Shown in pieces: positions 188 through 7,900 of a stretch of 9,764 nucleotides of DNA; the stretch's first letter is position 1; every line of letters begins with the position of its first letter. Made by a program: the position numbers and the translations under genes. The stretch comes from Octopus sinensis (Eukaryota). The stretch is from NCBI RefSeq assembly GCF_006345805.1, contig NW_021827812.1, positions 1 to 9,764 on the forward strand. The letters run 5' to 3'. Below the pieces are notes generated by a model that was given only the letters and a program-made list of their open reading frames with translations, made no database searches and was not told the DNA's origin.

Positions 188-297
188 AGGCGCAGGAGTG
201 GTTGCGTGGTAAGTAGCCTCCTTGCCAACCACATGGTTCCGGGTTCGGTCTCACAACGTGGCACCTTGCGCAAGTGTCATCTGCTATAGACCTCGGC
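188..297 (+). mobile_element. tRNA-derived SINE, family 1, head only (copy A)
   Basis: Pol III A-box-like TGGTTGCGTGG (199-209) and B-box-like GGTTCGGTCTC (242-252), followed by GTGGCACCTTGCGCAAGTGTC, which resembles the start of the CORE domain. Aligns to the reverse complement of 3985-4098. Similarity stops near 297. Confidence 0.9.
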
Positions 298-1150: not shown

Positions 1151-1483
1151 ACACTTACATGACACCTTTTTACATACACACGCATATATATTCACGCCGT
1201 TTGCATTTTTCTTTCATCGCAGAACTTCCATCATCCCACTGCCAAGTTTGCCAACACCCCTTCCTTCCTTATTCATCTATGACCCCTTCCTTTCACATTC
1301 ATATGTTATGACGGAGAAATGCACACGAGTATTATTACAGTAGATAATAATAATAGTTTGAACGTCGCGCATGTCAATCATTGACACATTTTCATTAGTG
1401 AAGCATTATGGGTTTTAGAATGGTACTGAAGACTTTTAATATCTATCTATTAATCTTATCTTTACATCCACAAATATACAATG

Positions 1484-1484
1484 T

Positions 1485-1521
<37 letters not shown>

Positions 1522-1860
1522 CATATATATATACCCATATACATGTGTGTGTATATCTGTACATATGTGTGTGTTTGTGTGCGTGTATATATATTCAAAT
1601 ATATATACCTGCATATATATATAAATAGAGAGAGAGAGAGAGCGAGAGAGAGAGAGAGGTAGAGATAGATATAGATGTAGATATGTATATGTATATATCT
1701 ATATGTATATTTATACACGTGTCTGTGTATGTATATATCTATGTATATATATGCATATATATGTACATATATATATATGTGTATATAAATATATATGTAC
1801 ATATATTTAAAAAAATACACACACCACACACACAAACACTTACAAATACGTACAAACAAA
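1484..1860. repeat. Compound (CA)n/(TA)n/(GA)n microsatellite block
   Basis: Successive CA, TA, GA and TA-rich runs. Confidence 0.9.
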
Positions 1861-2140
1861 AACAATGACACACGAAAGAGTATACCTCTAATTATTCGGT
1901 GAAACTGCTGACATACCGAAACGTCAATCTAAAGCCAGCCTCCCAGTCTACCCTCTACCCGTCCACTCCCTTTTTCTCTCCTCTTCAGCCTTTCCCTCCC
2001 CCTTCATCATTTCCCTCCCCTTCATCCTTTCGCTCTTCCAACTCTTATTCCACCATTTTGCCACTTTTCTGCCTACTTCCCAAATTCCTGTTTTTTTTTT
2101 TTGGTTTGCTGGTTTCTTTTTTGTTCATCTTTTGTTTCAG

Positions 2141-2277: not shown

Positions 2278-2623
<346 letters not shown>

Positions 2624-3720: not shown

Positions 3721-4098
3721 CTCTCTTTTACTTGTTTCACTCATTTGACTGCGACCATGCTGGAGCACCGCCTTTAATCGAGCAACTCGACCCCGGGACT
3801 TATTCCATCGGTCTCGTTTGCCGAACCGCTAAGTAACGGGGACATAAACACACCAGCATCGGTTGTCAAGCAATGCTAGGGTGACAAACACAGGCACACA
3901 AATACACACACGCATATATATATATACATATATACGACGGGCTTCTTTCAGTTTCCGTCTACCAAATCCACTCACAAGGCTTTGGTCAGCCCGAGGCTAT
4001 AGTAGAAGACACTTGACCAAGGTGCCACGCAGTGGGACTGAACCCGGAACCATGTGGCTGGTAAACAAGCTACTTACCACACAGCCACTCCTGCGCCT
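3721..4098 (-). mobile_element. tRNA-derived SINE, family 1, full-length and best preserved (copy C)
   Basis: On the minus strand: A-box TGGCTGTGTGG (4077-4087), B-box GGTTCAGTCCC (4034-4044), CORE-like GTGGCACCTTGGTCAAGTGTC, a short TA/TG microsatellite, and a tail ending AAACAAGTAAAAGAGAG. Possible TSD TTTTATTATA at 3711-3720 and 4124-4133. Confidence 0.95.
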
Positions 4099-4576
4099 AC
4101 TAGTATAATATAGTATAATATACTTTTATTATAATATTCTGTATTGCGTTATACTGTATCATATTACGTGTAAGTGGATTTGTCAAGTACATTTGTTAAG
4201 CAGTTCATTCTAGAAATGTTGGATGCTCTTCTGCTATGAAAAATCATTCTACTTCCAGAGACCACTGAAAGCTGCAGAGGGATTTCGGATCTGTGTACCT
4301 TAGGGTGTGCAGAGAGAACGGCTTTACCACAGCTAGTTTAAGAGAGAGCGCTCAAGCATGAGTCCTGTAACGGTAAAGGAAGTGTTTGAGTAGTGGTTGG
4401 AAAGAACCCGGATAGATATCATGAGTTACTGCAAAGTAAAATGTTATCTAGCCTTGGGGTATCGATGGGAAATAAACCGGTGATTGGTCTGTCGTTGAAA
4501 TTTAAATTCTCTGAGGAATCCTTTTATTTAAAGACTTAAAAGTATAAGAATCTGACTCCTTTCTTACCGCAAGTAA

Positions 4577-4780
4577 TAAATTACACCATCTAGAAAATTA
4601 CATATAATACAAAAGTTAAAATCAAAATAACAATTATAAAGTAAAGATGAAGTAAATTACAAAAATAATATAATGTATATAATAGGTAGTATTTTTGTAA
4701 TTTACTTAATCTTTACTTTTTAATTGTTGTTCTAATTTTAACTTTTCTATTATATGTAATTTTCTAGATGGTGTAATTTA
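4577..4780. repeat. Long inverted repeat or foldback element: 91-bp arms, 22-nt spacer
   Basis: Arms 4577-4667 and 4690-4780 match at 85 of 91 positions with no gaps; the outer 33 bp are perfect. Confidence 0.97.
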
Positions 4781-5371
4781 ATTATTCATTTTAAATTGAT
4801 AAAAGGGTTTTTTTCTAATATTTTATATATATATTATTTTGTGTGGAATTTGATTTAGTATCTCTAAATTGAATTCTTTTTCCTTGTAAGTTTGGATTTT
4901 ATTCCCTCAATGATAATATATCTATATATATATATATATATATCTACTATACATATATATGGTAGCAAATATTCGTTATAAATATCACCACCATGGTCTA
5001 GCATGTATAAAAATAGTCAATAGACAACATATTCATATTTTAAAATAGTGTACATTTAAACACAAAAGAAAACTACCCTTTAACAGGTAATTTTTACATA
5101 CTAGGAATAGCAGCCAACTCGGCCAAAACCACGACTACTTTACTATGTATATCAGTCTTCATATTTTATGTAGGCAATCCTGTATTTTCACTATAGAGAT
5201 ACTATTCAGTACTCACACGTCATCTTCAGTATATTATATCTCTTATATCTCTCAAACATTTTCATCTTATATCTTTCAAACTTGCCCTATATTTCTTCCT
5301 GACAACCAAAGCCTAGCGAACTCTGTCTTTGTGTTTGTGTGTATGTTTGTCTGCAACTCTCTCTCACTAAC

Positions 5372-5449
5372 TTTCTCTCTTTATCTCTCTCCTTCATTCT
5401 CCCTCTTTCTCTTTCTTGCTCTCTCTCTCCCTTCTCTCTCTCTCTCTCT

Positions 5450-5478
<29 letters not shown>
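5372..5478 (+). repeat. (CT)n polypyrimidine tract
   Basis: Near-pure CT run directly downstream of CACTAAC (5365-5371). Confidence 0.9.
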
Positions 5479-5949: not shown

Positions 5950-6088
5950 CATATTAATATATATATATATATATATATATATCTATATATATATATATAT
6001 ATATATTTAAACACACATTTACATGTACTTACATGAAAATATATGTACAATATATAACATATATTGGTAGTACAATATGTGTGTACAT

Positions 6089-6135
<47 letters not shown>

Positions 6136-6265
6136 CTTATATATATACACATATATATGTGTTTACATGAAAGAATATTTACCACAAATAAATATATCGG
6201 TATGTTATATATATGTTTGCATATATTGTATGCATATCTACAATCCTTGTATATAATATATATAT

Positions 6266-6310
<45 letters not shown>

Positions 6311-6428
6311 ATACACATGCATATATATATATATATACACGTATACACACATATACATGTACTTACACATGAAATATGGGTGCCTTGCATAAGACATACT
6401 GCTATGTGTATATATGTGTATATGTATA

Positions 6429-6459
<31 letters not shown>

Positions 6460-6826
6460 GATGTTTATATATATGTCTGTGCATATATTTATATATATAT
6501 ATGCTGTATGTATATATATATGTACATAAAAGTATTCATGTAAAAGTGTGTAAATATTGTATTAGGAGGCACACATACAGAGCCCCTATATATATATATA
6601 TATATATATATTATTATATATCATATATATTATATACACTTGCATATATATGTATACATATGTGTACATATGTGTACATATATATATATGCGTATGTATG
6701 CATATACGTAAATATATCTATATATTCATATATATATATAAATATATATGTGCATAAATACAGACATACATACACACAAAGAGACATAAATGTACTATAT
6801 AGATATATATATATACATAGATAGAT
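5950..6826. repeat. Extended (TA)n-rich low-complexity region
   Basis: Many interrupted TA runs with CA/TG variants. Confidence 0.95.
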
Positions 6827-6936: not shown

Positions 6937-7037
6937 ATATAGAACGCCCTGTAGCTATGACTGCATGGAATCGTTGGAAATACATTGGATTGACGCTACG
7001 TTGTTTGCATTATGTGCAGCTGCGGGTATCATATGAG
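6937..7037 (+). CDS. Probable 101-nt internal coding exon (phase 1-0), unrecognised protein
   Basis: Acceptor TTGTTTGATATTTCAG, donor GAG|GTAAAC, and a stop-free frame (D)IERPVAMTAWNRWKYIGLTLRCLHYVQLRVSYE. It sits in a unique-sequence island between two TA-rich regions. Confidence 0.5.
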
Positions 7038-7044
7038 GTAAACA

Positions 7045-7200
7045 TGTATGCATATGCACACGTACACATACACACACATAGACACAGACACACACGCACT
7101 GCCACATATGTGTGAATTGATATGTCTACATATTTGTGCATATATATGTTGTCTATGTGTGTGTATATATATATATATATATATAAATGTATATGCATAT

Positions 7201-7247
<47 letters not shown>

Positions 7248-7543
7248 TATATTTTATATATGCATATATACAACTAACATATATATATATATATATATCT
7301 ATTTTACTGTATTGCTATTTATATACGCTCGCATACATATATGCATGTCAATGTGTGTGTGTGCGTGTGTAGCACACACACGCGTGTGCGTATATTTAAC
7401 ACATGCATGTCTGTCGTATCTCTCTTTATGAACATATATAGATGTATATTATTATATGCATTGATGCACGTATATATATATATGTATCTATATATATATA
7501 TATATATGTATCTATATATATATGTATATATGTATATATAATA

Positions 7544-7575
<32 letters not shown>

Positions 7576-7652
7576 CTATATATATATATATGTTTGGTGT
7601 GTGTGTGTGTGTGTTTGTATCTTTCTATATATATATATAGATATATATATAT
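7045..7652. repeat. Extended (TA)n/(TG)n/(CA)n low-complexity region
   Basis: Interrupted dinucleotide runs. Confidence 0.95.
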
Positions 7653-7758: not shown

Positions 7759-7900
7759 GCCTGAGTGCAGGAAGCTTGCTTCCCAAACACATGTTCCTGG
7801 GTTCAGTCCCAATTCATTTTACCTCAGGTAAGTGTCTTCTGCTAAACCCTGGGGCCTACCAAAGCTTTGAAAGTGGATTCCGTAGACAAAACTGGAAGCT
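7759..7900 (+). mobile_element. SINE family 1, diverged head/core only (copy D)
   Basis: GGTTCAGTCC B-box at 7800-7809; AAGTGTCTTCTGCTA...CCAAAGCTTTGAAAGTGGATTCCGTAGAC aligns to the reverse complement of copy C. No tail. Confidence 0.85.

What the first reader, a model, noticed from the sequence alone, without database searches (positions are those of the whole stretch)
4577..4780. Near-perfect 204-bp foldback in otherwise unique DNA
Seen: 91-bp arms matching at 85 of 91 positions, no gaps, a 22-nt loop, about 16% GC, an A-rich left arm and a T-rich right arm. The outermost dinucleotide on each side is TA. On the + strand RNA the mismatches include two A-C oppositions (A4625-C4732 and A4734-C4623). 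Established: TA target duplications mark Tc1/mariner-type MITEs; A-C mismatches in long dsRNA are preferred ADAR sites; long hairpins can yield endo-siRNAs; AT-rich palindromes extrude cruciforms. Inference: either an unannotated foldback MITE or a locus-specific intronic hairpin RNA or editing substrate.
Basis: partly seen in the sequence, partly recalled or inferred. Interest (0 to 1): 0.7.

Follow-up and report, generated by a model that had tools for sequence, protein, structure and literature searches.

The report
AT-rich 204-bp foldback, probably MITE
A real, sharply bounded 204-base DNA palindrome sits in non-coding, repeat-rich octopod DNA; it is most likely an old copy of a small hairpin-shaped mobile element (or a local inverted duplication), and nothing found here shows that it has a function.

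Summary
Window 4577-4780 is a quasi-palindrome with 91-nt arms matching at 85/91 positions and no gaps. It extends to 94-nt arms (87/94) around a 16-nt loop. GC is 16.7%, the left arm is A-rich and the right arm T-rich, and TA lies at both ends. It folds far better than shuffles on either strand (z about -20). Complementarity drops to chance right outside the TA ends.

There is no coding capacity, no Rfam family, no second copy in the window, and no exon nearby.

The decisive test is genome copy number plus the empty or orthologous site. I could not run it, because none of the searchable DNA collections holds octopod DNA. A control search with the window's own high-copy SINE also found nothing.

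My best reading (about 0.5) is a decayed palindromic, TA-targeting MITE of the MADE1/Stowaway kind. The main rival (about 0.3) is a single-locus inverted duplication.

The two A-C oppositions are simply what transitions produce and do not point to ADAR. The endo-siRNA idea is disfavoured for molluscs by published data. Either strand, if transcribed, would give a roughly 91-bp dsRNA that generic ADAR hyper-editing could target.

This is an ordinary feature of low interest.

The parts
4577..4780 (.). Whole 204-nt quasi-palindrome (foldback element)
   Evidence: (I9)
4577..4670 (+). Left arm, A-rich (A55 T24 C9 G6). The outer 33 nt pair perfectly with the right arm.
4671..4686 (.). Central unpaired loop, 16 nt (TAATGTATATAATAGG). 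It is 22 nt (4668-4689) if the weak inner pairs are excluded.
4687..4780 (+). Right arm, T-rich (T54 A24 G9 C7), reverse complement of the left arm at 87/94 positions
4577..4578 (.). Left terminal TA. It could be one copy of a TA target-site duplication, or simply the end of the palindrome.
4779..4780 (.). Right terminal TA (same caveat as the left one)
4623..4625 (+). Small internal loop in the + strand RNA: C4623/A4734 and A4625/C4732 flank the A4624-U4733 pair. In the - strand RNA these two become G:U wobbles.

Best explanation
This is a decayed copy of a short, non-coding, whole-length palindromic DNA transposon derivative (a MITE) of the TA-targeting, Tc1/mariner-like kind, lying in non-coding octopod DNA. 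It is built like MADE1 or Stowaway: two terminal inverted repeats, here about 92 nt each, joined by a 16-22-nt centre with nothing else inside.

Such elements are cut out and pasted into a TA dinucleotide by a transposase supplied in trans, which binds the termini. The TA is duplicated on insertion, which would explain the TA at both ends.

The two arms differ at 6.6% of positions (K2P 0.069, about 3.5% per arm). This copy is therefore old and probably no longer mobile.

Secondary consequences are inferred, not shown. If read-through transcription covers it in either direction, the RNA folds into a dsRNA stem of about 91 bp. That stem meets the published operational criterion for an intramolecular ADAR substrate. 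At the DNA level it is a moderately hairpin-prone quasi-palindrome.

Shown: the structure, sharp boundaries, TA ends, lack of coding capacity, lack of any known RNA family, and equal folding on both strands. Inferred: transposon origin, mobilisation mechanism, editing.
For: The palindrome is real and extreme. Its boundaries are sharp, with complementarity falling to chance immediately outside the terminal TA and no arm-like sequence in either flank. The size of 204 bp, 83% A+T and absence of any open frame longer than about 25 codons are typical of MITEs.

The outer 33 nt of the arms are perfect and all six mismatches lie further in. The probability under uniform scatter is 0.06, which is only suggestive of conserved termini.

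Whole-length palindromic MITEs with two TIRs and a few central bases are an established kind: MADE1 has 2 x 37-bp TIRs plus 6 bp (PMC1784062), and Stowaway-like families arise from Tc1/mariner elements (PMC3814204). [quoted passage not shown]

The substitution-only divergence between arms argues against a sequencing artefact.
Against: The defining property of a MITE, many dispersed copies, was not testable. No second copy or half copy occurs in the 9.7-kb window, and none in 20.3 kb of Argonauta hians.

The TA ends belong to the palindrome, and a TA would end a random palindrome about 14-17% of the time.

From my own memory (a lead, not a test), the termini (TA)AATTACACCATCTAG do not resemble canonical Tc1/mariner/pogo ends such as CAGT or ACAGGT.

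The AAATTACA motif occurs three times per arm, but this is not significant (P = 0.21 for any 8-mer at three or more occurrences; P = 0.49 for a 9-mer repeat).

Local inverted duplications with a similar 15-nt spacer do exist in an octopod assembly (L001).
Confidence: 0.5

Rival explanations
1. It is a single-locus inverted duplication. A stretch of about 94 nt of local A-rich (or T-rich) sequence was copied in reverse orientation next to itself. The cause would be fold-back priming at a break or a template switch during replication. This left a 16-22-nt spacer, and the two copies then drifted apart by about 7%. It would have no mobility and no function.
For: There is only one copy in the window, and none in the A. 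hians sample. TA ends are expected by chance at 14-17%. No subterminal motif is significant. Short-spacer palindromes that are clearly local occur in A. hians L001: an inverted partial unit abuts a 354-bp tandem array, giving 124-nt arms and a 15-nt spacer. Snap-back and fold-back formation from short inverted repeats with 3-12-bp spacers is documented (PMC7999016).
Against: No microhomology is visible at the outer junctions, since the first flanking positions do not pair. By my estimate from general knowledge, hairpins of this size and A+T content with short loops in animal genomes are more often MITEs. The L001 examples sit in satellite arrays and are 99% identical, which is a different context and could be assembly artefacts.
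Confidence: 0.3
2. It is a selected hairpin-RNA gene, whatever its origin. It would be transcribed and maintained because the roughly 91-bp dsRNA serves one of three roles: a small-RNA precursor (miRNA or hpRNA/endo-siRNA), a dedicated ADAR substrate or sponge, or a regulator of host-transcript processing.
For: The hairpin is very stable on either strand. It exceeds the operational criterion used for intramolecular ADAR substrates, which is at least 80% identity over at least 50 nt (PMC9989829). Palindromic MITEs have become miRNA genes elsewhere (mir-548 from MADE1, PMC1784062).
Against: No Rfam family matches it, even at E <= 1. The stem is about three times longer and far more perfect than an animal pre-miRNA. 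Molluscs, including O. bimaculoides, show no evidence of a dedicated endo-siRNA pathway (PMC12479628). There is no strand asymmetry in mismatch type: G:U versus A:C is 1:2 on + and 2:1 on -. Three transversion mismatches are uncompensated. Transcription is unknown and there is no exon in the window.
Confidence: 0.07
3. It is an assembly or sequencing artefact: a chimeric fold-back read or a mis-join created a palindrome that is not in the animal's genome.
For: Palindromes are a known product of chimeric library molecules and are hard to sequence (PMC4057610, listed). I could not inspect reads.
Against: Artefactual fold-backs copy the same molecule, so their arms are identical or differ by read-error-type indels. 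Here the arms differ by six substitutions and no indel over 91 nt, with a non-palindromic 16-22-nt centre. The feature is small and lies inside a 9.7-kb contiguous stretch.
Confidence: 0.04

Closest known systems
MADE1 (human mariner-derived MITE, source of the mir-548 family)
   Same: It is a whole-length palindrome made of two TIRs with a few central bases. It is non-coding, and either strand's transcript folds into a stable hairpin (PMC1784062). From my own knowledge, not checked in that paper, it also inserts at TA.
   Different: MADE1 is 80 bp (2 x 37 + 6), whereas this element is 204 bp (2 x about 92 + 16-22). MADE1 has a known parent (Hsmar1) and thousands of copies, while neither parent nor copy number is known here. 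From memory, the termini are unrelated.
Stowaway-like / Tc1-mariner-derived MITEs (e.g. Gnome, Elf, Goblin from Ozma in Aedes; from memory also Angel in zebrafish, Cimi-1 in Ciona, PAL elements in C. elegans)
   Same: They are short, A+T-rich, TA-flanked, strongly folding and non-autonomous. They arise by internal deletion of a Tc1/mariner element (PMC3814204).
   Different: Those families are defined by many copies and a matching autonomous element. Neither could be tested here. The terminal sequence here does not look like the classical Stowaway or Tc1 ends.
Palindromic AT-rich repeats (PATRR17, about 190 bp; PATRR11; PATRR22)
   Same: They are A+T-rich near-palindromes of comparable size that can form hairpins or cruciforms (PMC1851657).
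   Different: From my own knowledge, PATRRs have essentially no spacer and more symmetric arms, and they are known through recurrent translocations. This element has a 16-22-nt spacer and 7% arm divergence, both of which lower secondary-structure propensity (PMC7999016). No instability is known for it.
Drosophila-type hpRNA loci (long inverted repeats giving endo-siRNAs)
   Same: A long, near-perfect intramolecular dsRNA is encoded at one locus.
   Different: hpRNA loci have longer arms and target specific genes, and they need a siRNA pathway. Molluscs appear to lack a dedicated one (PMC12479628).
Inverted-repeat ADAR hyper-editing substrates (e.g. inverted Alu or SINE pairs)
   Same: Intramolecular dsRNA with at least 80% identity over at least 50 nt is the general metazoan editing target, in octopus too (PMC9989829).
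   Different: Those substrates are usually two separate repeat copies hundreds to thousands of bases apart. The window's own inverted SINE pair at 188-289 and 3997-4098 is an example. This element is instead one tight hairpin. Neither transcription nor editing has been shown for it.

Membership tests
TA-targeting (Tc1/mariner-like) palindromic MITE | Short (<800 bp) and without coding capacity | tested here: met
   204 bp; the longest stop-free stretch in six frames is about 25 codons; no Pfam hit nearby
TA-targeting (Tc1/mariner-like) palindromic MITE | Terminal inverted repeats | tested here: met
   Arms of 91-94 nt at 93% complementarity, with the outer 33 nt perfect
TA-targeting (Tc1/mariner-like) palindromic MITE | TA target-site duplication flanking the TIRs | tested here: inconclusive
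   TA is present at 4577-78 and 4779-80. TA is self-complementary and so cannot be told apart from the palindrome's end. Local TA frequency is 14-17%.
TA-targeting (Tc1/mariner-like) palindromic MITE | Many dispersed copies in the genome | not testable with these tools
   No other copy in the window or in 20.3 kb of A. hians. The hairpin 22-mer gives 0 hits in the viral, metagenome and prokaryote collections. The window's high-copy SINE 23-mer also gives 0, so these collections hold no octopod DNA.
TA-targeting (Tc1/mariner-like) palindromic MITE | Empty site (flank-TA-flank) in a paralogue, allele or sister species | not testable with these tools
   The orthologous locus could not be fetched. 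ORF look-ups were not on record and the neighbouring ORF has no homologue.
TA-targeting (Tc1/mariner-like) palindromic MITE | Termini matching those of an autonomous transposase-encoding element | not tested
   No octopod transposon library was available. From memory, the ends do not resemble canonical Tc1/mariner/pogo ends.
Animal microRNA precursor | Hairpin of about 60-90 nt with an imperfect stem of about 22-35 bp, or a match to a known family | tested here: not met
   The stem is 91-94 bp and near-perfect. No Rfam hit overlaps 4577-4780 at E <= 1.
hpRNA / endo-siRNA locus | Long transcribed inverted repeat yielding about 21-nt small RNAs through a siRNA pathway | not testable with these tools
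   The structure is compatible, but there are no expression data. The literature reports no evidence of a dedicated endo-siRNA pathway in molluscs (PMC12479628).
ADAR hyper-editing substrate | Intramolecular dsRNA (at least 80% identity over at least 50 nt within a few kb) | tested here: met
   93% over 94 nt with a 16-nt loop; the criterion comes from PMC9989829
ADAR hyper-editing substrate | Transcribed, with clustered A-to-G differences between RNA and DNA | not testable with these tools
   No RNA data are available, and no exon or gene was identified in the window
PATRR-like unstable AT-rich palindrome | Near-perfect A+T-rich palindrome with little or no spacer | tested here: inconclusive
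   83% A+T and a size close to PATRR17 (about 190 bp, PMC1851657). It has a 16-22-nt spacer and 6-7 mismatches per arm, and spacers and divergence lower the propensity (PMC7999016).
Local inverted duplication (fold-back or template switch) | Single copy; the ancestral or orthologous site carries one arm only | not testable with these tools
   The same limits apply as for copy number. No junction microhomology was seen.

The most novel reading that the evidence does not exclude
The hairpin is a conserved, transcribed octopod-specific RNA element. It would be a tight dsRNA stem of about 91 bp, kept in a neural gene's intron or in a lncRNA. It would act as a dedicated ADAR-binding or hyper-editing platform, or as a Dicer substrate in a phylum reported to lack an endo-siRNA pathway. 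This would link a palindromic transposon relic to the unusual RNA-editing biology of cephalopods.
Probability: 0.04. Interest if true: 0.6.

Novelty: new member of a known kind. Interest (0 to 1): 0.18.

Why it matters
As it stands it matters little. Short A+T-rich foldbacks are a routine component of animal genomes. This one adds, at most, an uncatalogued repeat to an octopod repeat library.

It would matter more under two conditions. If it proves to be multi-copy, it would be a new MITE family useful for annotating cephalopod genomes and for masking spurious hairpin or miRNA calls. If expression data show that it is transcribed and heavily edited, tight hairpins of this kind would be clean natural reporters of ADAR activity in cephalopods.

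Tried and rejected
1. Other copies in the window. blastn at word size 7 with two scoring schemes found only the two arms plus weak A+T/(ATT)n low-complexity matches.

2. A third, degenerate arm copy in the flanks. An initial weak match at 4772-4840 did not survive a shuffle test (p = 0.5-0.86).

3. Subterminal repeats as transposase-binding sites. TAAATTACA lies at arm positions 1 and 77, and AAATTACA occurs three times per arm. Neither is significant (P = 0.49 and 0.21).

4. Known RNA family. An Rfam search at E <= 1 gave 86 hits, none on the hairpin. All lie on TA/CA microsatellites and fall below gathering scores. No tRNAs were found.

5. Public DNA collections. An exact 22-26-mer from the conserved outer stem gave 0 hits in viral, metagenome and prokaryote genome contigs. 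A control 23-mer from the window's SINE, which is conserved in A. hians, also gave 0. These negatives therefore say nothing about copy number.

6. Reaching orthologous loci through ORF products. Five window ORFs are not on record. The 48-aa ORF next to the hairpin has no homologue. The SINE ORF hit one Argonauta hians protein, and its 20.3-kb locus shares only the SINE with the window.

7. Exons or transposase remnants in the window. No Pfam hits of note and no protein-like stop-free segments.

8. Alternative TSDs. Read by eye, there is no TTAA on the left (piggyBac). TAA on the left against TTA on the right are inverted, not direct (PIF/Harbinger). Longer TSDs would have to be palindromic by chance.

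9. I ran no further search on sampling octopod loci at random. At about 20 kb per look-up, I estimated the expected yield of a MITE copy at a few percent.

Full report
**Observation**

The repeat finder lists arms 4577-4670 and 4687-4780 (94 nt, 93% complementary, 16 nt apart). This is the only long, closely spaced, high-identity inverted repeat in the window that is not made of microsatellite.

The non-complementary pairs are C4610/C4747, C4623/A4734, A4625/C4732, T4628/G4729, T4637/T4720 and G4649/A4708. GC is 16.7%. The left arm has 55 A and 24 T, and the right arm is its mirror. TA lies at both ends.

The fold energies are about 20 standard deviations beyond dinucleotide-preserving shuffles:
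- + strand RNA: -98.9 kcal/mol, z = -19.9.
- - strand RNA: -100.7 kcal/mol, z = -23.7.
- DNA: -69.2 kcal/mol, z = -18.5.

**Boundaries and internal anatomy**

Complementarity stops right outside the terminal TA. Only 7 of the next 20 and 17 of the next 40 positions pair, against 0.32 expected from composition. Neither flank resembles either arm (shuffle p = 0.3-0.86), so there is no hidden third copy and the element is sharply bounded.

The six arm differences are three transitions and three transversions with no indel. The p-distance is 0.066 and K2P is 0.069, or about 3.5% per arm if both arms started identical. All mismatches lie inside the outer 33 nt. This has probability 0.06 under uniform scatter, which is suggestive of conserved termini and no more.

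The motif AAATTACA occurs three times in each arm and nowhere else in the window, but shuffles show this is not unusual (P = 0.21; a 9-mer repeat has P = 0.49).

No reading frame longer than about 25 codons crosses the element.

**Context**

The window is non-coding, repeat-rich animal DNA.
- Tandem Repeats Finder lists (TAT)100, about 800 bp of (AT)n, and several (TA)n, (CA)n and (CT)n arrays.
- A SINE-like repeat of about 165 nt is present four times, in both orientations.
- No stop-free segment looks like an exon and ten candidates have no Pfam match, so 'intronic' cannot be confirmed.
- The only external match is the SINE-like repeat. Its translation hits one 'hypothetical protein' of Argonauta hians. 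The 20.3-kb A. hians locus shares just that repeat with the window, at 87.6% over 113 nt. This places the window in an octopod but does not name the species.

**What could not be tested**

The deciding question is whether the element is multi-copy with TA-flanked insertions or a single local duplication. Answering it needs the source genome or a relative.

Exact searches with the best-conserved outer-stem 22-26-mer found nothing in the viral, metagenome and prokaryote-genome collections. A control 23-mer from the window's SINE-like repeat, identical in A. hians, also found nothing there. These collections therefore contain no octopod DNA, and the negatives are uninformative.

Attempts to reach orthologous contigs through ORF products failed.

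**Interpretation**

The anatomy is that of a whole-length palindromic MITE: short, A+T-rich and non-coding, with two long terminal inverted repeats joined by a few bases, sharp ends and TA at each end.

This is an established kind. MADE1 has 2 x 37-bp TIRs plus 6 bp, and either strand folds (PMC1784062). Stowaway-like families arise by internal deletion of Tc1/mariner elements (PMC3814204). [quoted passage not shown]

I therefore rank 'old copy of a TA-targeting palindromic MITE' first, at about 0.5.

The TA evidence is weak. TA is self-complementary, so it cannot be separated from the palindrome, and TA makes up 14-17% of local dinucleotides. From memory, the termini do not resemble classical Tc1/mariner ends.

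The main rival, at about 0.3, is a one-off inverted duplication by fold-back priming or template switching. The A. hians locus shows that short-spacer local inverted duplications occur in octopod assemblies: an inverted partial unit abuts a 354-bp tandem array, giving 124-nt arms and a 15-nt spacer. That context is different (satellite arrays, 99% identity), and the example might itself be an assembly artefact.

An artefact here is unlikely (about 0.04). The arms differ by substitutions only, around a non-palindromic centre.

**RNA-level ideas**

The two A-C oppositions are not a pointer to ADAR. Every transition between the arms yields A:C in one strand's RNA and G:U in the other. The + strand has two A:C and one G:U, and the - strand has the reverse. 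Neither strand is favoured, and three transversion mismatches are uncompensated.

No Rfam family matches the hairpin even at E <= 1. The 86 weak 'miRNA' hits in the window all lie on microsatellites, below gathering thresholds. The stem is about three times longer than an animal pre-miRNA stem.

A survey that included O. bimaculoides found no evidence of a dedicated endo-siRNA pathway in molluscs (PMC12479628).

What remains plausible is generic. If transcribed, the stem exceeds the operational criterion for intramolecular ADAR substrates used across metazoans, octopus included: at least 80% identity over at least 50 nt (PMC9989829). It would probably be hyper-edited like any other inverted repeat. 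I give a selected RNA function about 0.07.

**DNA-level idea**

The element resembles the smallest human PATRR in size and A+T content (PATRR17, about 190 bp; PMC1851657). However, its 16-22-nt spacer and 7% arm divergence both reduce hairpin and cruciform propensity (PMC7999016). Its apparent age also suggests it is tolerated.

**Verdict**

This is an ordinary feature, at most a new member of a known kind. A single BLASTN against the source genome, plus one orthologous alignment, would settle its origin.

Noticed in passing
window ~170-300 and ~7773-7890 (one orientation); ~771-935 and ~3935-4100 (the other); L001:10040-10152: A SINE-like interspersed repeat of about 165 nt occurs four times in the window. 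The Argonauta hians copy is 87.6% identical to window 3935-4047. By eye, one end reads like a tRNA-derived head with box A/B-like motifs, but ARAGORN calls no tRNA.
   Followed up: partly
window 188-289 versus 3997-4098: Two SINE-like copies in opposite orientation, 85% complementary over 102 nt and 3.7 kb apart (I7). If co-transcribed, this is the classic kind of long-range inverted-repeat dsRNA that ADAR edits, independent of the foldback.
   Followed up: no
P0001 / L001:10001-10300: The only database protein matching the window is 'hypothetical protein Ahia01_000201400' of A. hians. It aligns to the translation of the SINE-like repeat (78% identity), so that gene model is probably a repeat-derived mis-annotation.
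   Followed up: partly
window 2278-2623; 5957-6749; 560-768; 7164-7302; 7471-7591; 1087-1154; 5357-5478: The microsatellite load is very heavy: (TAT)100 followed by (TAG)20, about 800 bp of degenerate (AT)n, and several (TA)n, (CA)n and (CT)n arrays.
   Followed up: partly
window 1481-1627, 6290-6775, 7020-7540 and others: All 86 Rfam matches at E <= 1 (mir-3149, mir-297, mir-466, mir-1277 and others) fall on TA/CA microsatellites, often on both strands, and are far below gathering scores. They are composition artefacts, not miRNA genes.
   Followed up: yes
L001:12505-13448 and L001:14740-15744 (Argonauta hians): Tandem repeats of 354 and 357 bp (at least 3 units each) are each abutted by an inverted partial unit. 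This gives 99%-identical palindromes: 124-nt arms with a 15-nt spacer (12505-12767) and 187-nt arms with a 209-nt spacer (15162-15744). They are flanked by (TA)n. They are either real local inverted duplications or assembly artefacts.
   Followed up: partly
window 1973-2035: There is a short tandem array with an 18-nt unit (TTTCCCTCCCCTTCATCC, 3.4 copies, 82% matches).
   Followed up: no
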